A stretch of 63,506 nucleotides of DNA, the filler included, from Octopus bimaculoides (Eukaryota): the NCBI RefSeq assembly GCF_001194135.2. It is 5 parts of 5 records of this genome, joined end to end, with 100 filler letters (N's around TTAATTAATTAA, not from the genome) between each part and the next. Parts side by side here need not be neighbours in the genome. Positions count along the whole stretch, not along the records: positions 1 to 19,801 come from NC_068989.1; 4 more parts are not named here. One strand, written 5' to 3'. Below are positions 722-17,837 of the stretch, in pieces. Numbering within the stretch: position 1 is the stretch's first letter; every line of letters begins with the position of its first letter. A model generated the notes under the pieces. It saw only the letters and a list, made by a program, of their open reading frames with translations, did not search any database and was not told where the DNA came from. A program made the translations under genes and the position numbers.

Positions 722-1010
722 ACGTGTATGTGTGTGTATATGTGTGCATATGCGGATTCTATGAATGNNNNNNNNNNNNNNNNNNNNNNNNNNNNNNNNN
801 NNNNNNNNNNNNNNNNNNNNNNNNNNNNNNNNNNNNNNNNNNNNNNNNNNNNNNNNNNNNNNNNNNNNNNNNNNNNNNNNNNNNNNNNNNNNNNNNNNNN
901 NNNNNNNNNNNNNNNNNNNNNNNNNNNNNNNNNNNNNNNNNNNNNNNNNNNNNNNNNNNNNNNNNNNNNNNNNNNNNNNNNNNNNNNNNNNNNNNNNNNN
1001 NNNNNNNNNN

Positions 1011-1774: not shown

Positions 1775-1953
1775 TTTTTGGTTCCTTTGTTTTCCAAATA
1801 TAAAAATTATTATTTTTTTGTCTTCTAATAGTGATTTACACAGCTAATTTTTTTTTAAATACATATTTCTTATTTTCAGTTATTTGATGCAGAGGCGTTT
1901 TGTCATGCAATTAATTAGTATAATGAATGTGAAACTTCGGTCTCTCTTAAAGT
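1775..1953. repeat. Copy 1 of a ~180-bp dispersed repeat (copy 2 at ~2810-2982)
   Basis: aggctttttggttcctttgttttccaaatat...ttttcagttattt...ctcttaaagta recurs ~1 kb downstream in the same orientation, roughly 80% similar by eye. Confidence 0.75.
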
Positions 1954-1967
1954 ATAGATATAGTGAA

Positions 1968-2122
1968 ATTAATGAAGATTAGAAGAACGGAGATTTGCAC
2001 ATCCAAGTTTTATTATTCAGGTATTTACATCGTTCTTCACTTAGATCAAATGTAAATAACTGTAAATAGCTGTATAATAAAACTTGGATGCGGAGATCCC
2101 CGTTCTCCTAATCTTCATTAAT
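1968..2122. repeat. 62-bp inverted repeat with 31-bp spacer
   Basis: 1968-2029 is the reverse complement of 2061-2122 with 7 mismatches. Confidence 0.9.
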
Positions 2123-2308
2123 CTCATTACTTTCTCTACGGGAACTATGCAGTCCCTATAAGGACATTCGGATTTACCAAGTGAGGATTAACCGAGTATA
2201 GTAAATTTTAACTAACTTGAGTTTCATTAAAATGCACCGTGGCAAACTGGTATTAAGAACCGATAAGAGCTAAAACGGTAACCGCCAGGATTATATATCC
2301 CTGGAAAC

Positions 2309-2345
<37 letters not shown>

Positions 2346-2809
2346 GCATACATGCACATACTCTCACATACATACATGCATCACATCATTATATACATCT
2401 AGTTAGAAGCATGACATTTTTGCGTGTGTTTAACCTTTTTAAAAACAATAATGAAAATGAAATCTTTCTAAAAATAAATTTTAAATGATATTTCAATAAT
2501 AAATACGAAACGATAAATATAGATTTTCATTTATTTACACTATTTTTTACATTCATTTAAACCTCTTTCTTCTTTTACGTACTCAGTCGACCTGCTAGAA
2601 ATAGTACCAAATCTCTCAAATACCACATCTTCTCTCTTAATTAGTAAAGTAGACATTCAATAATGTAATCCTATATATATAATCATAGTCTAACAAAATG
2701 AATGATAATAATAACAAAATGAATGATAATAATACTTTCGATTATTTGTCAACTCGATCAGAAGTGACCATTCTGGTTACACACCTCGATATAAGTCTGA
2801 TAATCTTTC

Positions 2810-2982
2810 TAGGCTCTTTTGGTTTCTTTGTTTTCCAAATATCAAAATGATTTTTTTCCTTCTGATAGCGATTTTACACATTAAAAAATTTTTTTTTCAC
2901 TTTTCAGTTATTTAATGTAGTAGCGTTTTGTAATGTAATTACTTAGTATAATGAATTTGGAACTTCTGTTTCTCTTAAAGTA
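2810..2982. repeat. Copy 2 of the ~180-bp dispersed repeat
   Basis: Aligns with 1775-1953. Diverges after ctcttaaagta and lacks the 62-bp inverted repeat. Confidence 0.75.
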
Positions 2983-4575
2983 GAATACATCTTAAATTTT
3001 GTTTCTAATTACATGAAATGATGTAAAATCGAATGCAGTCTAGTCACATGGATTCAATCTAAGAGTTACATTGAGTGCACGTCTGTGGAAATCTCAGCCG
3101 CTTATATGAAAATTTGACGAGTATTTGAATTGTTCGAACAACTGAATACTTATCGTCTATACCGATAACTAATCCATAATTACATTTAAGCCAAGCAGTT
3201 ATGAAGTAAAGGAGATTTAGCTGCTATTTCTAAGAGGTCGACGCACCGACTGGATGAAGGCTACTCTCGTTGTCGTATAAGTCGACTTCAATGAAAATGT
3301 AACACAAAACAATAACTTTTATACAATTTATTTTACCATTTTCTCAAAAGTGGTAGATTTCAATTAATTTATTATACGAAACATGCAGCCTATTTTATAC
3401 CAGACAGTCAACAGCGTACTCTTCAGATAACCAAACAATCAATGAAATCCCCTCTAAATAACCATTCGGCCAATGGAGTCCTTTCCAGATAACCAGACAT
3501 TCAATGGAGTACTGTGCAAGCAACTAGACAATCCATAAAGTCCTCTCCAAGCAATTTGTCAAACATTCATAGATTATACATAAAGTATTTTTTATACTGA
3601 AGACTTTCACGCAAGCTGGAACGAACTAGTTTAACTGAGCCATGTTTGTACATTTTCGCCACAGAATCAAATTTAATGAAGCTTCTCAAACTAGTACCAT
3701 TTGATTAGTTTGACTAACCATATGGCTCCATATTTTTACAGATAGTAACATTTATGCCTCACTCAAGAGCATTAATGGTGAAATGAAAACAAATTAAGAC
3801 ATCGTTAACATAAAAAAAGATTTCTAAATCAGTTGCGATCTCGGTATATTAGTGCTATATCCATTCTTTCGTAGAGCTGCTCGCTACTTTCACAGATTTT
3901 AAAATAAAAATGAAACAAACAAGACCCATCATCTTTTAAGCGAACATATGTAATACACAGATCTTGTACATTTGAAAATATTATTTGACTTGTAAATGAA
4001 TCCGAGTAACAGGTTATCGTTGCATTTTAATAACTCAGCTGAATTGCTCAGGCAATTTTAGTATACTGAAATGTGTTGTAATGTTAAATCATTTCTTGCT
4101 TGAGACAGAGTAATGTAACAAGTAACATTGGTCAGACCGATATGAAATACAAAAATATCACTGAAAATATGTAGAAATATATGGGCCATAACGTTAAAGT
4201 AAAATATTTTACATTCCCTACGGCCGTTTCTTGTAGTGGGCGAGTAGAAGAATGAAAAAAAAAACATCGCACAAATTGCCTTGTTTAATAAAATTAAGAT
4301 AAGTTTTTAAACGTTTTAAACTTGTTCATCACCATAGCAAAGAAAGAAAAATTATATGGAAACTCTGTTTCATCTTTAATAATGTGAGAGGAAGGCAAAA
4401 ATTTCCTTACTATTAGGGTGTTTAAGAACCAATACCGAAAGGATGGCATCAAAAACAGTATAAAATATTAGCATCTATGATCAGTTATCTAAAACAATTT
4501 AGACCGCACGGATATAAAAGTAATTGATTGAAAAAAAAATTTGTAAAGTACAAGCTTACACAGAAAACATAACAT

Positions 4576-5418: not shown

Positions 5419-5828
5419 CATATATGTATGCATGTATATATATACATACACACACNNNNNNNNNNNNNNNNNNNNNNNNNNNNNNNNNNNNNNNNNNNNN
5501 NNNNNNNNNNNNNNNNNNNNNNNNNNNNNNNNNNNNNNNNNNNNNNNNNNNNNNNNNNNNNNNNNNNNNNNNNNNNATATACATATATATACTAAAACGA
5601 GATGCTTTCTGTATATATTTGCAGTTAATTTCCACGATAAATAAATAACTATTCAAATGTCACAGCTTATATTGGTGCTGTTGTTATAAAATGTTATAAA
5701 AACTGATGTGTTTATATTACAATTGTATGAAAATGGTTTGAAACAGATTTCAGTCTCCATCTGTTATACCTACTGTCTATGTTTTAAAAGTCATTGGCGT
5801 AAGTTACCATTGCATGTTTTTTTTTCTT

Positions 5829-6296
5829 TCATAAGCAATAAAATTCGTGTATTACAACTGAACAAATTAAGCATTTTACGACACAGCACCAGTTAAACTT
5901 GCAATTGCATCGCTCATTGGAAATCCTCTGTATAGTTCTGTAACCACGGCCACAACACAGTAGATCACAACCGTCAATTGCTTTCGAAGTTAAGTTGCAT
6001 AACCGGCCGTGCGTTCCTGGAATACCGACCTTAGGGAGGGGTTCACAGAAATCCGGTGATACAATCAAGTAAACTAAATCTTCTTGTGTGTGAGGTTTGA
6101 ATTTTGGATTCATTGGAACTAATAATTTCTTAGTTCCTTTGTTCTTCTTACGAACCTCTGTGGCTCCGTCAAATTTCTCTTTTATTATCTCTCCAACTTC
6201 ATGAAACGAGCGTATCGCCCGCCAGCAAGTTCGCATTTCACATGTTCCAGATACTCCGTGACATTTACACTGGATTTTCATATGGTTCTCAATTGC
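5829..6296 (-). CDS. Wnt4: Terminal coding exon of a Wnt4-family ligand ([25 protein letters not shown]...HEFYCL*)
   Basis: Wnt signature [10 protein letters not shown] with the lipidated serine, 16 cysteines in Wnt spacing, and [10 protein letters not shown], FKPHTxEDLVYL and TSKAIDGC motifs as in vertebrate WNT4. A phase-0 acceptor (ttttatag|GCA) falls where the WNT4 last exon begins (K|AILTHM). Stop TGA at 5829-5831. Wnt identity is near certain; Wnt4 orthology is from recalled motif similarity. Confidence 0.9.
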
Positions 6297-6320: not shown

Positions 6321-7173
6321 TGTGTTAGTTTCATATTTTTACACAATAATACAAATTAATTTAGTAATAAAACTTCTCGATTTAGATTTTTATTGTCATT
6401 GAAGCTATGCATTAGCAGTTTCTACAAAAAGGAGAAAAAAAAGCCAAAAGTCGTAGTCTAAAAATGTCACTCACTGACATTGTTAAAGCTCTAGTCAGCA
6501 TAAAAATCTTATATTCTCTATTCCATCCCGTTTGGATGTGAAACCCTCAACAAAATTACATTTTCGAATATGTTGCTCTTTCCACTCATCTAGTACCTGT
6601 ATTACTTTAGGGGTCAATTCAATAATCTATGTCACTTCTGCAACATTTGCCATAGAGCTAAGCGAAAAAGATCAATTTAATAAATTGCTTTATTTAATTG
6701 TTTAATCTTGTGGGAAACAGTATGTGTCAGGGAAATAAACCATTACTGTAGTAGAGAGCAGCACATTACTATCTGGAACCTGGTTGAAATACTTGCACCG
6801 AAGTGGACTCGGCTAAAGGAATCCAAGAGCCACGTGATAGGTTATATACCAAAAAAATTTTATAACATTTTTCTGACATAATTTAAATATATACTTTAAC
6901 CATGTAACACAAGCCTTCTGTAGTTTTTTCACTCTTATTATCTTTTATACATCCAACCACGTGCTTTCACATACCNNNNNNNNNNNNNNNNNNNNNNNNN
7001 NNNNNNNNNNNNNNNNNNNNNNNNNNNNNNNNNNNNNNNNNNNNNNNNNNNNNNNNNNNNNNNNNNNNNNNNNNNNNNNNNNNNNNNNNNNNNNNNNNNN
7101 NNNNNNNNNNNNNATATATATATATATATATATATACTTATGTTAAAATTCCCAAAAAATATAGAGAGAAATT

Positions 7174-7577
7174 AATACATTAAAAATATACATATAAAAA
7201 TATCTAAATATATAGATAGGTACATTAAAAATAAATTGAAAAATTAAATACATATATCGGTCGACTTATAGATTATAAAACGAAATCATAAAAAGAGATA
7301 AGAGTCTATAAGATACAAAGTTTAGGTGTTAATAATCCAGTTAATAATCTTACAGACGTTTCTGGGGGTCCGGTTATCCAGTCATATATAAGATAAGGCC
7401 CCCACCCCCCAGAAACGGTCGTAGGACTATCAACTGGATAATTAACACCCAAGCTCTGTATCACACTGACTGTTATCTCTTTTTATGATTTCGTTTTATA
7501 ATCTGTAAGTCGACCTATATTTTTAATGTATATATCTATATATTAATATATTTTTATATGTATATGTTTAATGTATT
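7174..7577. repeat. ~400-bp imperfect palindrome, probably derived from a Penelope-like terminal repeat
   Basis: Core arms 7254-7368 and 7406-7520 (115 bp, 17 mismatches) around a 37-nt loop, extended by AT-rich outer arms. The centre has gacgtttc...gaaacggtc, as seen in Penelope-like repeats. Confidence 0.8.
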
Positions 7578-7827: not shown

Positions 7828-8433
7828 TTGTTTAAAAGAGTTCCAACTCTGTCTGTTTTTTATGTTTTATNNNNNNNNNNNNNNNNNNNNNNNNNNNNNN
7901 NNNNNNNNNNNNNNNNNNNNNNNNNNNNNNNNNNNNNNNNNNNNNNNNNNNNNNNNNNNNNNNNNNNNNNNNNNNNNNNNNNNNNNNNNNNNNNNNNNNN
8001 NNNNNNNNNNNNNNNNNNNNNNNNNNNNNNNNNNNNNNNNNNNNNNNNNNNNNNNNNNNNNNNNNNNNNNNNNNNNNNNNNNNNNNNNNNNNNNNNNNNN
8101 NNNNNNNNNNNNNNNNNNNNNNNNNNNNNNNNNNNNNNNNNNNNNNNNNNNNNNNNNNNNNNNNNNNNNNNNNNNNNNNNNNNNNNNNNNNNNNNNNNNN
8201 NNNNNNNNNNNNNNNNNNNNNNNNNNNNNNNNNNNNNNNNNNNNNNNNNNNNNNNNNNNNNNNNNNNNNNNNNNNNNNNNNNNNNNNNNNNCCATATTCT
8301 ATATCCCACATTAATTTCACAAGAATATAAATAAAACATAAAAAACAGACAGAGTTGGAACTCTTTTAAACAAAATAATATATTCCTCTATACACAATCA
8401 TACAAAACCCCTTTTTTTGTATTTATTTTTACT

Positions 8434-9949: not shown

Positions 9950-11585
9950 ACAGGAAATTGGAGATTTTCGAGAGAATATCACCTAGAGAATTCTTGGTGA
10001 TTTACTGTTGGAAACACCCCAAGCCAACAGGAGGGACGGGCAATCCGCCCCGCCAAACAAAACCAAGTAAGTTTTCCTTTTCTTTTCTTTCCTTTTTCCG
10101 ACAACATGGTTGTGGACAGAATAGGCAGCCTGGAGTCGCCTTGGAATCGGGGTCACCTACTAAACGACCTCAAAGCACTGAATGTGGACGTGGTGGCCAT
10201 TAGTGAAACCAGAATTTCCGACTCACGAGACTTCCGACCCATTTTCGGTGACTGTGTGGTGTATACATCTCCAAGTCGCCCGGGAGCGAGAGGCGAAGTC
10301 GTCGTGATGGTTCGGAAAAATCTGGATCTTGCAATAAGGACGATCTTCCTGGATCCAAAAGGTAAGTCGATGGTCTTGGATGTGATAGGCAGCGAATGAC
10401 ATACTTCCAGGCTAGTTTCCGACTATGCTCCAACAGGGGCAGGACGACCAGATTTCTTCAGACGTCTGAAAACGTTACTGGGAACGTCCTGCTCTTTAGT
10501 GTTAGTGGGGGGATTGGAATGGAATTTTAAATGTAAGGTGGGACTGTGTAGGTTTAGCAGATAGGAGAGGAGGGTGTAAAAGCCTCGCAAATCTGCTCAG
10601 ACGATTCCAACTGTCTGACAGGTATCGACTGGATTTTCCGGATGTGCCAGTGTGAACCTGATCAAACCGCATCGGGTCATCCAAATCGTATCTAGATAGG
10701 GTATTCTGTAGAGTAGCAGATAAGGATAGCATAGGTTGTGCAAAGTTTAAAGTAGTCGATTACACAAACCACGAATTCGTGATTTGTACAGTCGACCTAG
10801 ATAGGCTTCATAGACAGGGACCTGGTTATTGGAAGCTGAACACGTCGTTGCCGGCGCGTAAAGATTTCAGTGACCGGATTAGTGAACTAGTTAAGAGGCC
10901 TTGACGGGGGAAATAATCAACAATAACTGGTTTGTCGCCCTGAAAAGGGCGATTAGAATAGAATCGTAAGGTTTAGCCAAGGGTTAAAAGTAGAAAGAAA
11001 TAGAGCAGAGGCAGGGCTAGTCAAAAAGTTAGATGACGCTTTTACAAACGGCATCGCGACAGACATGCTCGCAGCGAGATTGGCACTCAACCAATTCTTC
11101 AACGGAAAACACGAAGGCTGCGTTGTCAGAGCTAAGGCACGAGCACTTAGACACGAAGGGACGAAAGCCGTTCAATGGGCCCGAGTGGCAGATGCACAGC
11201 GTGACAATAAATCCACAATCCGATCTTTGCCGGACCACGACGGGCAAATGACAACTGATCCGAGACAGATGTGTGCGGCCTTTCAGCGGCGCTTCGCTCA
11301 ACTGTTCGGGAGCAGCGGTGATCCAGGTCGCAGGATGGATTTCACGTCCTACCTCGACGGACTGCCGCGGCTCTCGGCGACGGAGCGCTGCGAAAGACAA
11401 CAGCCTTTGAAATATGGGAAGTAATGGCTAGCTGCACGAGGAGTAAATAGCCTTGTTTGGATGATCTGCACTATGAGCTTTACGCTTACATGCCAGGCTT
11501 GTTCGGTGACCTCGTCGTAAACGTTTACGGCAGCTGGCAACAGAATGGGATAATTCCCTGTTTTGTGAGCCGAGGAGCGATGGCC
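9950..11585 (+). mobile_element. Tx1/L1-clade LINE relic: end of ORF1, apurinic endonuclease and pre-RT region of ORF2, 3-prime truncated
   Basis: Frameshifted peptides DVVAISET, VLVGDWN, SYLDRVF, GPGYWKLNTS, GCVVRAKAR and LDDLHYELY match the L1/Tx1 APE domain and the region before the RT. Many stops. Confidence 0.85.
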
Positions 11586-12641
11586 ATGGGTTGTAAAAAA
11601 TTAATTGATGAAAAATTAATTGCAATATATTGGTCCAGTTAATTGATTGGAGTCGTCCTGCCAATTAAATAATTGACTGCTATCATATCAGTTAATTGCA
11701 ACATTGCGAGCGAAAGTTTTTCAAATGGCTCATACTTCATTCAACGTTCAAATGGAAAATACAGCGTTCTATTATTATTTGAGGTATTGTGTTGGCGCTT
11801 TGTTCTGACTGCTGAGAATGATTCACACATTTTGTAGTGTTTAGGAATTGACTATTGTGTATGCTGTCAAATAATCGCTGCCGAGAATGATTCACACATT
11901 CTGTCTTCAAGTCATTAAATCGTAACTTCGCTTGCAACACGGTTGTATCTTGAATTCCGCTCCAACATATTAACTGAATCAGACTCTCATCAGTTGAGTG
12001 GCGAAATATCTTCTATTTTAAACTGTGACGAAATACCTTTTATTTTAAACTAACCCATGCCTCGTGAAAACGAGCAAATCGTCAGAAAATATTTTAACCA
12101 AACTGACAGTGAACATGTATGGAAATGTAAGTGTGGAAAAATTTTGACCCGGAAAAAAGGAACTGGATGGATAAATCTTATGAATTATATAAAAAAAACC
12201 CAGCATCCAAAGAATTCTACAACACAAGCAACTGGACAACCATCTTTATCAAGTTTTCTTTCACCAAGAAGTTGTTTGGTCAGTCGTTTGGCCTTAAATG
12301 TTTCTGGTTGGATTGAGTGGGTATGTGTTGGTTTAAAACCATTTTCCTTTACTAAAGACCCACTGACTCGCAAGTACACAAACTTGGAAAGTATAACAAA
12401 TGTGATCTTAAAGAAATACACGGAGAAACTTACTCAAGAAGTGGAAAAGAAAATATCTGATGAACTTCCATGTAAATTTTCGTTGATGATCGACGGTTGG
12501 AATAAGGGTTCGACGCATTTGATTGGACTTTTTGCATCTTATTCGTGCAATTATCAAAATGACTATTGTGATGTTTTGCAGGTATTTTCGTCAATGGAAA
12601 GTAAAACATCATTCATTAATATTATTTATATTATCATATGA
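11586..12641 (+). mobile_element. hAT-like DNA transposon fragment with the N-terminal half of the transposase (ORF 12057-12641)
   Basis: BED-finger-like WKCKCGK...WINLMNYIKKTQHP and FSLMIDGW (first catalytic Asp context of hAT transposases). The rest of the DDE domain is absent. The left end begins CATGGGTTGTA at the LINE break. Confidence 0.7.
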
Positions 12642-13445: not shown

Positions 13446-15098
13446 NNNNNNNNNNNNNNNNNNNNNNNNNNNNNNNNNNNNNNNNNNNNNNNNNNNNNNN
13501 NNNNNNNNNNNNNNNNNNNNNNNNNNNNNNNNNNNNNNNNNNNNNNNNNNNNNNNNNNNNNNNNNNNNNNNNNNNNNNNNNNNNNNNNNNNNNNNNNNNN
13601 NNNNNNNNNNNNNNNNNNNNNNNNNNNNNNNNNNNNNNNNNNNNNNNNNNNNNNNNNNNNNNNNNNNNNNNNNNNNNNNNNNNNNNNNNNNNNNNNNNNN
13701 NNNNNNNNNNNNNNNNNNNNNNNNNNNNNNNNNNNNNNNNNNNNNNNNNNNNNNNNNNNNNNNNNNTTTATATATATATATATATATGTATGTATATATG
13801 TATGTATGAATGCATGTATGTATGAATGCGTGTATGTATGTATGTATGTATGCATACATGTATGCATGCATACATGTATGCATGCATGTTCTTTGTCCTT
13901 TCATGATGGAGTACAAGTTTATTTGGAAAATCGAAGAGAACGTAGGCCCAAAACAGAAAAATATATAAAAAGATTAAGAAACACTGCAACAAATAGTGAC
14001 AACGGAACCTTATGAAGCCGTATTAATTTACAAATCATCAACTCAGCCATTAATAAACACACCTGCATTATTCTTCAAACTTTTAAAAGAAAATTACTTT
14101 CATGTCATTTGAAACCTTCATATCAGTCATCGTCTTCATTGAAGTTTATCGCCAGTGTCGAATTCAGAGAAAGGCCAAGTGGCGGAGGTGCTTTTTCTTG
14201 CAAGTTTTAGCTGCCTTTCTTACTAAGACTTCCATTGAAAATGTGATAATGTACTGAGGTGATTAATTCTTTTCCTTTTCTGTTGGAGTGTTAGTAAAGT
14301 AGAGGTGATATGTATCCTCCCTGTTCGTTGGTAAATATTTCAGTACATATGTATGTATGCATGTATGTATGTATGTATGTATGTATATTATTGTGTCTGG
14401 GGGGAGTCATTCTCTTTTAGTGCCTTATTACTTAACACACTCACCGGTTCGATTTCCACTCATTTACTTATTTATTTTTTCTAGATATATATCTCGTATC
14501 CGAGAATTTATTATTTCTTTTTGCTGAACGCTTTCTTTATGATGACTCTGTAGAGCAATTTTTACAAAGAAGAGTCGATGGCATTGACTGCATGATAATG
14601 TTGGTGGAGGATGAATTTGATTTTGTCGAGCTTTTCTCCCCTGTCCTTTGAATTCTTCCTTTTCTCTTCTGGTGGCTTCGAAGGTTTTGGTTCCGATGGT
14701 GATGGAGCACTGCCACTTGGCACGATCACAGGCTTGTGTTTCAAACGCTTTAGGCTCAGGTCCAGTGGCTTTCAGTGTTGTTTCGTATTGGTTCTTGTAT
14801 CTTCGAAGAGTGCAGTCCCGTTGTCTTTACGCACACGCACACGCACGCACGCACGCACTCACAAACGCGCGCGTGCGCGAGCACATAGTTGCAAAACAAG
14901 TGGAGAAAAATGTACATTTGTACACATATTTAGAGCATAGTATTGCGCAAAATACGACTGTCTTATGATCGGTTATGTGAAACTATCGATAAGAGTTTGT
15001 GAATTATTTTCAGCATCAGTATAACAGTATGTGTATACCTATGTGGTATGTATATATATTTGTAAGTATGCATGCATAATATATATGGAAGTATATGT

Positions 15099-15148
<50 letters not shown>

Positions 15149-15566
15149 ATAGAACTGCATCTGGTTCAGGATTTTCATGGTTTTCAGGAGTGTGGAACCA
15201 CCTCTCAGCCGCTATTGTTCCCAGATAAACTTTGGCCCAGAGTAGTAGCACCTGTCAAGGTCCCAGCTAAGCGTTAACTATCTTATGAGCGACAGGACCT
15301 AAAAATACTCGGATTGGTGCACGAAGACCTAGTAAACTCAGTTAGAGTGAAGGATTCCCGGTCTTTGTAAAGGCATCCCTCTAAGTGAAGGTGTAACCTG
15401 CTACTCTACTCAATCGGATATCTTGAACTCACCTGTCAGCAATGGTCATGCTCACCTAACGAGTAGGCAGGCGTCATAGATTTAGCCAATAAAAACACAC
15501 GCAGTGTATATTTGGTGTTAATTTGCTTCAGCTTTATATTACATTACATTACATTAATCCTATTTC

Positions 15567-15611
15567 GGCCAGAGTTCTTTCGTCACACTACTGTGACCTC
15601 ATCAGTGGTCC
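15567..15611 (-). ncRNA. Minimal type I hammerhead ribozyme motif
   Basis: Minus strand: GGACCA CUGAUGA G GUCACA-GUAG-UGUGAC GAA AGAACU C UGGCC. Intact core, 6-bp stem II, stem I of 5 bp with one bulge, CUC cleavage triplet. Confidence 0.7.
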
Positions 15612-16135
15612 TTTGCTTTCTTCTTTCTTATGTGCGTCCCTCCTTTGCTAACGATCAGCCATTTTGTATTTTGTATTCCTATTGTATGTGTCTACGCATG
15701 CGTATCCCTCTATGTGTGTCTATGTTTTGTAAGTGCATGTGTGTGTATGGGGAGTGCCTGTATTATCTATATCCTCTGTTAATACATGTTCGTTTATTTT
15801 TGTTTTTATTTATTTATTTAGTTGTTCATGTGTTTATACCTACTTCTTTTTTTTTTTTGTGAAGATAAACCTAGCCTGAATAGGAAACTGGAATGGAACA
15901 CTAACACACACCCCCAACAAACCACAACATATGACAATAAGTTCCCCATAAACCTCTGTCTGAGGTGCTTGTTGCGACTTGACAAACAGTACAAACCCCT
16001 GGTAGACAGAAAATCTTCAATCTACATCAAAATATTGGATGCTACGAGACATCTTAATAATAATAACAAGCATTTAAAAAAATTTTGGCACAAAATCAGC
16101 AACCTCACGATATTGTATTCTGTGCGACGTCTATC

Positions 16136-16169
<34 letters not shown>

Positions 16170-16182
16170 TGATGATAATAAT

Positions 16183-16395
16183 CCTTTCTACATTAGGCAC
16201 AAGACCTGAAATTGGGGGAGTGCGATAGTAGATTACATCGACCCCAGTACACAACTGGTACTTAGTTTATCGACCCCGAAAAGATGAAAGGCAAAGTCGA
16301 CCTCGGCGAAATTTGAACTCAGAACGTAGCGGCGGACGAAATACCGCTAAGCATTTCGTCCGGCATGTTTAACGATTCAGCCAGCTCGCTGCCTT
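16183..16395 (-). mobile_element. tRNA-derived SINE family B (head aaggcagcgagctgg..., TTA-repeat tail)
   Basis: Shares gttctgagttcaaatt, gtcgactttgcctttcatc and tcggggtcgataaa with seven other copies in the window. The tail runs into (TTA)n. Confidence 0.85.
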
Positions 16396-16879
16396 AATAA
16401 GAATAATAATAATAATGATGATGATGATGATGAGGAGGAGGAGGAGGAGGAGGATATATCGAATAGGATGTTATTTTTAACAATGTACTAAAATAAAGTA
16501 TGAGATTAATTCTCTTCCACCGAAAACATAACATTCTGATATCGTACGGGTCCATTTCAGCATATTTTGTGTTGTTCTCTATTGGGAGTTCTCGAACGAG
16601 GCTTTCACAAACAACGACACAGAAATCTAGAAAAGCGTTACCTTATTTTTGGTGTGTGGTAATGTCGTGTTGATAAATGTAAACCGACCGATTTGATCAG
16701 CCTAAGCTAGAAATAGGGTTAAATGCGAATACAGACGGTTTAGTTTTTTTTTTTAAATGACAAAAACACAACAATGAATATTGTGTTGATTAATTTTGCA
16801 GCTGATACCAATGGCGGTAGACAAGTATCGTTAACAGGCATTCCATTTCCTTTTTCCAGTGGATATATACATACATACA

Positions 16880-16912
<33 letters not shown>

Positions 16913-17261
16913 GCATGCACACGTACGTAAGTACAAGAATACATATATACTTGTAGACATACATATACACACATAATAGCATACATATGTATATATATAT
17001 ATATATATATATATNNNNNNNNNNNNNNNNNNNNNNNNNNNNNNNNNNNNNNNNNNNNNNNNNNNNNNNNNNNNNNNNNNNNNNNNNNNNNNNNNNNNNN
17101 NNNNNNNNNNNNNNNNNNNNNNNNNNNNNNNNNNNNNNNNNNNNNNNNNNNNNNNNNNNNNNNNNNNNNNNNNNNNNNNNNNNNNNNNNNNNNNNNNNNN
17201 NNNNNNNNNNNNNNNNNNNNNNNNNNNNNNNNNNNNNNNNNNNNNNNNNNNNNNNNNNNNN

Positions 17262-17520: not shown

Positions 17521-17837
17521 CAGTCCCAGGAAAGGGAAGAATGCTACTGCTATTTAGCCCCAGGAAACATCGTTTCCAGTTGGCTATGTGACACAAGCGT
17601 TCGGTGTCCTTAAGTTTTCAAACAGGGGAGATAAGCACCTGCACCCAGCAAAGCCAGCATCCAGAAACTAGTTTCAGAATCATTGCTCTTCATCTGTCTG
17701 GAGTAGCTTGACAGCTAGCAAGCTTATTTCTCCTGTTTGAAAACTTAAGGACACAGGACGCTTGTGTCACATAGCCAACTGGAAACGATGTTTCCTGGGG
17801 CTAAATACCACTAGCATTCTTCCTTTTCCTGGGATTG
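17521..17837. repeat. 116-bp inverted repeat with 85-bp spacer
   Basis: 17521-17636 is the reverse complement of 17722-17837 with about 9 mismatches, including a long uninterrupted perfect block. Confidence 0.95.

What the first reader, a model, noticed from the sequence alone, without database searches (positions are those of the whole stretch)
15567..15611. Hammerhead ribozyme motif on the Wnt4 sense strand in the presumed last intron
Seen: complete core CUGAUGA...GAAA, one extra G after A9, 6-bp stem II, bulged 5-bp stem I, and a CUC site predicting cleavage between 15572 and 15571, about 9.3 kb upstream of the acceptor and before the first artificial join. Established: minimal type I hammerheads with a tiny stem III are typical of Penelope-like repeats and work best as dimers, and an extra nucleotide after A9 occurs in natural hammerheads. 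Inference: a self-cleaving motif oriented to cut Wnt4 pre-mRNA. Its stem III segment AGAACU is only partly palindromic and no partner copy is nearby, so activity may be low.
Basis: partly seen in the sequence, partly recalled or inferred. Interest (0 to 1): 0.78.

Follow-up and report, generated by a model that had tools for sequence, protein, structure and literature searches.

The report
Penelope retrotransposon hammerhead relic in Wnt4 intron
The hammerhead ribozyme motif is really there, but it is the standard small ribozyme carried at the 3' end of a Penelope-like retrotransposon, left behind by an old broken insertion in an octopus Wnt4-like gene; as a lone copy it most likely cuts little or not at all.

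Summary
On the minus strand, 15611-15567 reads GGACCA/CUGAUGA/G/GUCACA-GUAG-UGUGAC/GAAA/GAAC/UC^UGGCC. It is the only such motif in the piece.

It is not a chance motif and not a Wnt4 device.
- It lies in a 350-nt repeat (15831-15481, minus). That repeat recurs at 79% identity in an Octopus vulgaris chromosome locus, L005.
- In L005 the repeat sits 364 nt downstream of, and on the same strand as, a Penelope-like element (PLE) reading frame with YVDD, a CX4CxxC linker and a GIY-YIG/CCHH endonuclease.
- The last 17 codons of that same frame lie 29 nt from the repeat in the window (15861-15911), inverted.
- A PLE relative from a metagenome (43% protein identity, L009) has a minimal hammerhead of the same build 35 nt after its stop codon. 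All helix pairs are kept there through seven compensatory changes.
- Between the two octopus copies, the hammerhead is the best conserved 45 nt (43/45 against 72% elsewhere).

The motif is in the Wnt4-like sense strand, 9276 nt upstream of the last exon. No partner copy lies within 19.8 kb, and helix III is 1-2 bp and only partly palindromic. Published lone minimal hammerheads are inactive in vitro.

Verdict: an ordinary new member of a known kind. Cleavage of Wnt4 pre-mRNA is unsupported.

The parts
15567..15611 (-). Minimal type I hammerhead motif. Helix I: 15611-15606 with 15571-15567. Core CUGAUGA: 15605-15599. Unpaired G: 15598. Helix II and loop: 15597-15582. GAAA: 15581-15578. GAAC-U: 15577-15573. 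C17: 15572. Predicted cut between 15572 and 15571.
   Evidence: Read directly. It is the only hit of my descriptor in the piece. The isolated RNA folds into helices I and II.
15481..15831 (-). 3'-terminal segment of a Penelope-like element (3' UTR or pseudo-LTR part). It carries the hammerhead about 90 nt from its 3' end (...GUGUGUUUUUAUUGGCUAA).
   Evidence: blastn against L005 3500-3842 gives 79% identity over 353 nt, E 2e-76 to 6e-76. In L005 the segment follows a PLE reading frame on the same strand.
15861..15953 (+). Fragment of the 3' end of the same PLE: the last 17 codons of the endonuclease frame (EDKPSLNRKLEWNTNTH, 15861-15911) plus about 40 nt. It is inverted relative to the hammerhead segment and 29 nt from it.
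   Evidence: tblastn with the L005 frame hits 15861-15911 at 76% identity, E 3e-4. blastn matches L005 3074-3156 to window 15861-15953.
5829..6296 (-). Last coding exon of a Wnt4-like gene (context). The acceptor AG is at 6298-6297 and the stop codon at 5831-5829.
   Evidence: ORF. The best named relatives are Wnt-4 proteins at 59-66% identity. tblastn 6296-5835. Acceptor and polypyrimidine tract.

Best explanation
The motif is the resident hammerhead of a Penelope-like retrotransposon. [quoted passage not shown]

An old PLE insertion in an intron of an octopus Wnt4-like gene left two fragments:
- the last ~350 nt of the element on the gene's sense strand, with the hammerhead about 90 nt from the 3' end;
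- next to it, inverted, a ~90-nt scrap of the end of the reading frame.

In a live element such hammerheads are thought to help process PLE transcripts. They act as dimers formed between tandem copies, or with the help of the element's own protein.

Here the catalytic core is intact but the motif is alone. Helix III is 1-2 bp, its dimerisation segment AGAACU pairs at only 4 of 6 positions, and no second copy lies within 19.8 kb. It is therefore most likely a silent or very weak relic that is transcribed as part of the Wnt4-like pre-mRNA and spliced out with the intron.

Shown: the motif, its homology to a PLE 3' region, and its architecture.
Inferred: the mode of insertion, transcription within the gene, and the lack of activity.
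For: 1. Repeat membership. Window 15481-15831 matches L005 (O. vulgaris OX597817.1) 3842-3500 at 79% identity, E 2e-76.

2. PLE context in L005 (the defining motifs are quoted from PMC8557442).
- A 407-aa frame at 1913-3136 lies on the same strand and ends 364 nt upstream of the repeat.
- It has YVDD, C-X4-C-XX-C, VVY...YVGET with cysteines between, two conserved histidines, and conserved R, E, H, E and N.
- Pfam GIY-YIG scores 21.5 bits, E 2.9e-4.

3. Second link in the window. The last 17 codons of that frame lie at 15861-15911.

4. Comparative support.
- Metagenome locus L009 encodes a 43%-identical PLE protein.
- It has a hammerhead 35 nt after the stop: UUGUA CUGAAGA C GUGAGC GAG GCUCAU GAAA UUAA UA UACAA.
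- It has the same extra nucleotide, 6-bp helix II, 5-bp helix I and 4-nt spacer.
- Against the octopus motif, helix II shows 3 compensatory changes and one G-C to G-U change. Helix I shows 4 compensatory changes.
- The chance of any loose descriptor hit in its 341-nt flank is about 2e-4 (rate).

5. Conservation. The hammerhead is the best conserved 45-nt stretch between the two octopus copies: 43/45 against 236/328 elsewhere, Fisher p = 1.4e-4.

6. [quoted passage not shown]

7. Octopus genomes carry PLEs, with an expansion at Jukes-Cantor distance 0.2 (PMC13282606; PMC8967140).

8. For weak or no activity.
- Lone minimal hammerheads are inactive in vitro and dimers are weak.
- A Poseidon hammerhead needed its protein.
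- There is no partner copy and no tandem array.
- Helix I is lost in the predicted fold of 301 nt of context, z = +0.96.
Against: - Only two octopus copies and one distant relative could be retrieved, so there is no family-wide covariation test.
- The L009 hammerhead was found with a descriptor that requires pairing, so its compensatory changes are partly built in.
- In L005 the hammerhead segment is separated from the reading frame by 343 nt of microsatellite. In the window the two PLE pieces are inverted relative to each other. The segment could therefore be a separate non-autonomous element.
- Pfam GIY-YIG is just below its cut-off for L005 and absent for L008 and L009.
- The core of the window copy is fully intact, so activity cannot be excluded.
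- Rfam hammerhead models give no hit. They also miss the L009 control.
Confidence: 0.8

Rival explanations
1. One reading: the motif is an active ribozyme that cleaves nascent Wnt4-like pre-mRNA 9.3 kb upstream of the last exon and so lowers or regulates Wnt4 output.
For: - The catalytic core is intact, while the paralogous L005 copy has A9 changed to C.
- It is on the sense strand and very probably inside the transcription unit.
- The isolated RNA folds into helices I and II.
- The hammerhead is conserved above its flanks.
- Ribozymes in the sense strand of introns are known in amniotes (HH9 and HH10; my own knowledge).
Against: - Lone minimal PLE hammerheads had no detectable activity, and dimers cleaved weakly and mostly at non-physiological Mg2+.
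- A PLE hammerhead needed its own protein, and no RNA-seq reads ended at its cut site.
- Helix III is 1-2 bp and its segment is not a palindrome. There is no partner copy.
- The hammerhead fold is not favoured in context.
- The conservation is explained by selection on the retrotransposon's master copies, not on this locus.
Confidence: 0.07
2. The 350-nt hammerhead segment is a separate non-autonomous element (a solo retrozyme-like or SINE-like passenger mobilised by PLEs), not the truncated 3' end of an autonomous PLE.
For: - In L005 it is 364 nt from the reading frame, across a microsatellite.
- In the window it is inverted relative to the fragment of the frame's end.
- Animal retrozymes are reported to derive from PLE pseudo-LTRs (bioRxiv 10.64898/2026.07.22.740005).
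Against: - In both loci where the segment was seen, a piece of the same PLE frame lies within 400 nt.
- There is no tandem array of the unit.
- L009 has its hammerhead in the 3' UTR of the PLE frame itself.
- PLE insertions often include adjacent inverted truncated copies (PMC8557442).
Confidence: 0.1
3. It is a chance match to the hammerhead consensus in AT-rich intron sequence.
For: - A loose descriptor hits random sequence 0.52 times per Mb per strand, which means thousands of hits per genome.
- A good-looking motif in L004 lies antisense inside a LINE coding region and is probably such a coincidence.
- Rfam gives no hit.
- The fold z-score is not significant.
Against: - The motif is in a repeat shared with a PLE 3' region.
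- It has all the PLE hallmarks except a fully palindromic helix III, with a chance rate of about 8e-6 per window.
- A homologous PLE has the same architecture in the same place.
- It is the best conserved part of the repeat.
Confidence: 0.02

Closest known systems
Minimal hammerheads of Penelope-like elements (Cervera and De la Pena 2014, PMC4209133)
   Same: - Type I topology.
- Helix II of 6 bp and helix I of 5 bp.
- An unpaired nucleotide between A9 and 10.1, and G10.1-C11.1.
- Helix III reduced to A15.1-U16.1 plus a few nucleotides.
- Located in the terminal repeat or 3' region of a PLE.
- Most copies are solitary and linked to truncated PLEs.
   Different: The 15.1-16.1 segment AGAACU is only 4/6 self-complementary in both octopus copies. 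The published motifs, and the L009 relative (AUUAAU), are palindromic.
Poseidon PAc hammerhead of Anolis (PMC11167929)
   Same: A PLE-borne hammerhead lacking a stable helix III. The RNA alone is inactive.
   Different: - The PAc motif overlaps the start of the reading frame. Here, and in L005 and L009, it lies downstream of the stop codon near the 3' end.
- PAc cleavage was shown with its protein. Nothing has been tested here.
Non-LTR retrozymes (tandem type I hammerhead repeats giving circular RNAs; PMC7229834, bioRxiv 10.64898/2026.07.22.740005)
   Same: Type I hammerhead of PLE ancestry, with no coding capacity in the local fragment.
   Different: - There is no tandem array and no second ribozyme.
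- Retrozymes are reported as depleted from introns, whereas this copy is intronic.
Intronic hammerheads HH9 and HH10 of amniotes (Rfam Hammerhead_HH9 and Hammerhead_HH10; my own knowledge)
   Same: Type I hammerhead on the sense strand of an intron of a protein-coding gene.
   Different: - HH9 and HH10 have stable helices and loop-loop contacts, are conserved at orthologous loci and cleave as monomers.
- Here there is no Rfam match, a minimal helix III, and an origin in a transposon fragment.
Chrysanthemum chlorotic mottle viroid plus-strand hammerhead with an extra nucleotide after A9 (De la Pena and Flores 2001, as cited in PMC4209133)
   Same: One extra nucleotide between A9 and G10.1.
   Different: It is a viroid type III ribozyme with full helices and is not related by descent.

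Membership tests
Hammerhead ribozyme (type I) | Conserved core boxes CUGANGA and GAAA in the right order | tested here: met
   CUGAUGA at 15605-15599 and GAAA at 15581-15578.
Hammerhead ribozyme (type I) | Helix II closed by a loop, starting with G10.1-C11.1 | tested here: met
   GUCACA/UGUGAC, 6 bp, with loop GUAG. It is kept in every predicted fold.
Hammerhead ribozyme (type I) | Cleavage triplet N-U-H with A15.1-U16.1, followed by helix I open at the ends | tested here: met
   C-U-C at 15574-15572. Helix I is GG(A)CCA/UGGCC, 5 bp with one bulge.
Hammerhead ribozyme (type I) | A stable helix III in the monomer | tested here: not met
   Only 4 nt (GAAC) lie between A15.1 and U16.1, so at most 1-2 bp can form. 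This is the known state of the minimal PLE variants.
Hammerhead ribozyme (type I) | Match to a curated Rfam hammerhead covariance model | tested here: not met
   No hammerhead hit at gathering score or at E up to 10 on 601 nt and 81 nt. The test is weak: the L009 PLE hammerhead control is missed as well.
Hammerhead ribozyme (type I) | Mg-dependent self-cleavage at the predicted site | not testable with these tools
   This needs in vitro transcription or mapping of RNA ends.
Minimal hammerhead of Penelope-like elements | Lies in the terminal repeat or 3' region of a PLE | tested here: met
   - It is homologous to L005 3500-3842, downstream of a YVDD + GIY-YIG/CCHH frame.
- A fragment of the end of that frame lies 29 nt away in the window.
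- L009 has its hammerhead 35 nt after the stop of a homologous frame.
Minimal hammerhead of Penelope-like elements | [quoted passage not shown] | tested here: met
   G at 15598, helix II of 6 bp and helix I of 5 bp. The criteria come from PMC4209133.
Minimal hammerhead of Penelope-like elements | Palindromic 15.2-16.2 positions and loop 3, allowing a dimeric helix III | tested here: inconclusive
   G15.2 and C16.2 are complementary, but the inner AA is not. AGAACU is 4/6 self-complementary in both the window and L005. L009 is a perfect palindrome.
Minimal hammerhead of Penelope-like elements | Belongs to a genomic family of copies that show covariation | tested here: inconclusive
   - Only one other octopus copy was reachable (96% identical in the motif, with A9 changed to C).
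- One distant relative has 7 compensatory pairs.
- No octopus genome could be searched by DNA.
Penelope-like element with C-terminal endonuclease (the element that carries the motif) | RT with YxDD, followed by a GIY-YIG nuclease that has the CCHH motif with cysteines between GIY and YIG, and conserved R, H, E and N | tested here: met
   - Alignment A2 of L005, L008 and L009 has these invariant: YVDD, C-X4/5-C-XX-C, VxY...C...YxGET, ER..EH, two H, E and N (criteria).
- Pfam GIY-YIG scores 21.5 bits against a cut-off of 22.6 for L005 only.
- The N-terminal part of the RT is missing from all three.
Non-LTR retrozyme | Tandem repeats of 170-400 nt, each with a type I hammerhead | tested here: not met
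   Tandem Repeats Finder reports only microsatellites in 14800-17014. There is one motif in the piece and no second copy of the segment.
Conserved intronic hammerheads (HH9 and HH10) | Match to the Rfam HH9 or HH10 models, and conservation at the orthologous locus | tested here: not met
   No Rfam hit. Orthologous introns could not be fetched, so that half is untested.

The most novel reading that the evidence does not exclude
The lone hammerhead keeps an intact core because it does cleave. In this reading it acts slowly, or with help from PLE protein or host factors, on nascent Wnt4-like pre-mRNA, so that a retrotransposon relic tunes the output of a developmental signalling gene. A milder version: this octopus PLE lineage has given up the palindromic helix III and uses a monomeric, protein-assisted hammerhead.
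Probability: 0.06. Interest if true: 0.6.

Novelty: new member of a known kind. Interest (0 to 1): 0.2.

Why it matters
- It documents a minimal hammerhead in a Penelope-like element of an octopus, and places it in the 3' UTR close to the element's end. It adds one more case of such a motif in the sense strand of an intron.
- This has little consequence by itself. Thousands of such motifs are known in animal genomes, and lone copies are inactive in the published assays.
- It would matter only if cleavage of the host pre-mRNA were shown.
- A practical point for scans: the Rfam hammerhead models miss this class entirely, so descriptor hits have to be validated through the transposon context.

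Tried and rejected
- Rfam at gathering score and at E up to 10 found no hammerhead hit. I rejected this as evidence against the motif because the L009 and L004 motifs are missed too.
- The fold z-scores of the motif (-1.05) and of 301 nt of context (+0.96) are uninformative.
- An exact-pattern scan of JGI metagenomes for the motif found 0 matches.
- I looked for family copies as spurious reading frames, using the 116-aa antisense ORF that spans the motif. The word-indexed search found none, and the full HMMER search of 1.84 billion representatives found none.
- A Pfam scan of the three sense-strand translation frames of 14000-16900 found no RT or endonuclease remnant. Only the last 17 codons survive, found later by tblastn.
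- Self-comparison of the window found no second copy of the segment.
- The orthologous locus could not be reached. The window's Wnt exon product is not on record, and the 97%-identical one sits on a 968-nt contig (92% DNA identity).
- Scans of viral and prokaryotic contigs for more PLE relatives found none.
- A profile search of solved structures with the PLE alignment found none.
- Density test: 1 descriptor hit in 128 kb of octopus DNA against 0.13 expected. That hit (L004) lies antisense in a LINE coding region, so I did not count it as evidence.
- MAFFT misaligned the three hammerheads, so I counted pairs from a hand parse in a script.

Full report
**1. The observation**

The minus strand of 15620-15561 reads GAAAGCAAAGGACCACUGAUGAGGUCACAGUAGUGUGACGAAAGAACUCUGGCCGAAAUAG. 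It parses as a type I hammerhead:

| Element | Sequence | Coordinates |
|---|---|---|
| Helix I, 5' strand | GGACCA | 15611-15606 |
| Core | CUGAUGA | 15605-15599 |
| Unpaired nucleotide | G | 15598 |
| Helix II | GUCACA / UGUGAC, 6 bp, G10.1-C11.1 | 15597-15592, 15587-15582 |
| Loop II | GUAG | 15591-15588 |
| Core | GAAA | 15581-15578 |
| Spacer | GAAC | 15577-15574 |
| U16.1, C17 | U, C | 15573, 15572 |
| Helix I, 3' strand | UGGCC | 15571-15567 |

Helix I has 5 bp with one bulged A. The predicted cut is between 15572 and 15571.

The isolated 61-nt RNA folds into helices I and II at minimum free energy, but no better than shuffled sequence (z = -1.05).

My descriptor finds no other such motif on either strand of the piece.

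**2. Chance**

I tested random sequence of 38% G+C.
- A loose descriptor (core boxes, helix II of at least 4 bp, helix I of at least 4 bp with one bulge allowed, any small helix III) hits 0.52 times per Mb per strand. That is 0.02 per window and thousands per genome.
- Motifs with helices as long as observed occur about 0.04 times per Mb per strand.
- Adding the published PLE hallmarks lowers the rate to about 2e-4 per Mb per strand (two simulated hits, so the figure is rough). The hallmarks are one nucleotide between A9 and 10.1, G10.1-C11.1, and at most 4 nt between A15.1 and U16.1 with 15.2-16.2 able to pair. That rate is about 8e-6 per window and about one per 2.7-Gb genome.

The motif alone therefore does not settle the question on a genome-wide scale. 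Context was needed.

**3. The host gene and organism**

- ORF 6281-5829 (minus) is the last exon of a Wnt gene. Its best named relatives are Wnt-4 proteins at 59-66% identity.
- tblastn with longer Wnt4 proteins places the start of the exon at 6296. It follows a polypyrimidine tract and an AG at 6298-6297.
- The cut site is therefore 9276 nt upstream on the same strand.
- No upstream Wnt exon is in the piece. They must lie beyond 19801 or in one of the six N gaps. An intronic location is likely but not shown.
- A BED/hAT-like ORF at 12057-12641 matches Octopus proteins at 70-75% identity. Several window repeats match O. vulgaris chromosome loci at 75-90%. The piece therefore comes from an octopus.
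- A 968-nt Logan contig carrying the Wnt exon is 92% identical in DNA.

**4. What the motif sits in**

I fetched about 128 kb of octopus DNA around hAT-like genes and compared it with the window. Window 15481-15824 matched L005 (O. vulgaris OX597817.1) 3842-3507 at 79% identity over 353 nt, E 2e-76. A more sensitive run extended the match to 15831/3500. The alignment (A1) ends sharply at ...GUGUGUUUUUAUUGGCUAA (window 15481), which looks like the 3' end of an element.

In L005 the segment is preceded on the same strand by a 407-aa reading frame at 1913-3136. It lies 364 nt upstream, across 343 nt of microsatellite. The frame contains:
- YVDD;
- a C-X4-C-XX-C linker;
- VVYSIRC...C...YVGET;
- ER..EH, two conserved histidines, and conserved E and N.

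These are the features that PMC8557442 gives for the endonuclease of canonical PLEs with the linker seen in Neptune and Nematis. They are invariant in an alignment with two metagenomic relatives (A2). Pfam GIY-YIG scores 21.5 bits, just under its 22.6 cut-off.

The window holds a second trace of the same element. The last 17 codons of that frame (EDKPSLNRKLEWNTNTH) lie at 15861-15911 on the plus strand (tblastn E 3e-4). The DNA match runs to 15953. The two PLE pieces thus lie head to head, 29 nt apart. Adjacent inverted truncated copies are described as common for PLE insertions. I could not reconstruct the history further. No other PLE coding remnant is nearby.

**5. Comparative test of the ribozyme**

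A scan of JGI metagenome contigs with the L005 frame gave two relatives, L008 (45% identity) and L009 (43%). L009 has 341 nt after the matched region. There, 35 nt after its stop codon and about 55 nt before a (TA)n tract, lies UUGUA CUGAAGA C GUGAGC GAG GCUCAU GAAA UUAA UA UACAA.

| Feature | Octopus motif (window, L005) | L009 motif |
|---|---|---|
| Extra nucleotide after the first core box | yes (G) | yes (C) |
| Helix II | 6 bp | 6 bp |
| Nucleotides between A15.1 and U16.1 | 4 | 4 |
| Helix I | 5 bp | 5 bp |
| A15.1-U16.1 segment | AGAACU, 4/6 self-complementary | AUUAAU, perfect palindrome |

The helix sequences differ between the two. Helix II has three compensatory changes and one G-C to G-U change. 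Helix I has four compensatory changes. Every pair is kept.

The descriptor requires pairing, so this covariation is partly built in. However, the chance of any loose hit in that flank is only about 2e-4 (rate). The position, just downstream of a homologous reading frame, is independent evidence.

Between the two octopus copies, the hammerhead is the best conserved 45-nt stretch. It is 43/45 identical, against 236/328 elsewhere (Fisher p = 1.4e-4). Only sliding windows that overlap it reach 43/45. The L005 copy differs by A9 to C, which breaks the core, and by one loop base. The window copy has the consensus core.

**6. Comparison with what is known**

Cervera and De la Pena (PMC4209133) describe minimal hammerheads in the terminal repeats of PLEs.
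- They have a long helix II and helix I of 4-5 bp.
- Helix III is absent or tiny and palindromic.
- Most copies are solitary and linked to truncated PLEs.

The window motif meets all of these except the full palindrome. Its segment AGAACU is 4/6 self-complementary, and this is shared with L005, so it is a family trait and not a local mutation.

The same paper found no detectable cleavage by a single motif. Dimers cleaved weakly, mostly at non-physiological Mg2+. A Poseidon PLE hammerhead cleaved only with its own protein, and no RNA-seq reads ended at its cut site (PMC11167929).

Octopus genomes carry PLEs, with an expansion at Jukes-Cantor distance about 0.2 (PMC13282606; PMC8967140). That is in line with the roughly 21-25% divergence seen here.

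The motif is not a retrozyme array, because only microsatellites are tandem. It does not match the Rfam models, including HH9 and HH10. Those models also miss the L009 control and the L004 motif, so this negative carries little weight.

**7. Mechanism and verdict**

The best-supported reading is that a PLE inserted long ago into an intron of the Wnt4-like gene. What remains on the sense strand is the element's last ~350 nt with its resident hammerhead.

In live elements the ribozyme is thought to process PLE transcripts as a dimer or with the element's protein. At this locus it has no partner within 19.8 kb and has a 1-2-bp helix III. In 301 nt of context, only helix II survives in the predicted fold.

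I therefore rate it a silent or very weak relic that is removed with the intron (confidence 0.8). A separate non-autonomous element is possible (0.1). Chance is effectively excluded (0.02).

This is a new member of a known kind and of low interest. It would become interesting only if cleavage in vivo were shown.

Noticed in passing
window 16183-16395 (+), flanked by (ATA)n 16136-16182 and (TAA)n/(ATG)n/(GAG)n 16395-16454: A high-copy SINE-like repeat. It matches at 15 or more places in only about 70 kb of O. vulgaris loci (L002, L004, L006) at 75-89% identity. ARAGORN finds no tRNA-like head.
   Followed up: partly
window 10065-11577 (+) and 11585-12641 (+); L005 6939-8474 and 9808-10222: A LINE remnant (Exo_endo_phos E 5.8e-4) lies directly next to a BED/hAT-like element. 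The same LINE-hAT pair (83% and 89% identity) is also in L005, the locus that holds the PLE. The two loci therefore share three repeats within 7 kb, but in a different order. This may be a rearranged old segmental duplication or a coincidence of abundant repeats.
   Followed up: partly
L004 15703-15745 (+) (O. vulgaris OX597819.1): A second hammerhead-like motif: CUGAUGA-UGGGU-CAAU-ACCCA-GAAA-CUGCAG-UC, with a 7-bp helix I and a perfect 8-nt palindrome ACUGCAGU. It lies antisense inside the C-terminal coding region of a LINE reverse transcriptase, so it may be a coincidence carried along by that LINE family. Rfam does not see it.
   Followed up: partly
window 15832-15860: A run of 13 T (plus strand) fills the 29-nt junction between the two inverted PLE fragments. 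How this head-to-head arrangement arose is unexplained.
   Followed up: no
window 17521-17636 / 17722-17837 and 7230-7368 / 7406-7544: Two inverted-repeat pairs: arms of 116 nt at 93% complementarity, 85 nt apart, and arms of 139 nt at 81%, 37 nt apart. They look like small foldback or MITE-like elements.
   Followed up: no
window 1776-1954 and 2817-2982: A direct repeat of about 180 nt at 87-90% identity, spaced about 1.03 kb apart, downstream of the Wnt gene.
   Followed up: no
L009 1678-1720 (+), L004, and window 15567-15611: The Rfam 15 hammerhead models report nothing for any of the three minimal hammerheads tried, even at E up to 10 on stretches of about 100 nt. This class is invisible to a standard Rfam scan.
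   Followed up: yes
window 768-1010, 5456-5576, 6976-7113, 7871-8291, 13446-13766, 17015-17261: Six assembly gaps (runs of N), each bordered by (TA)n, (CA)n or (CATA)n microsatellites. An upstream Wnt exon or further PLE sequence could be hidden in them.
   Followed up: no
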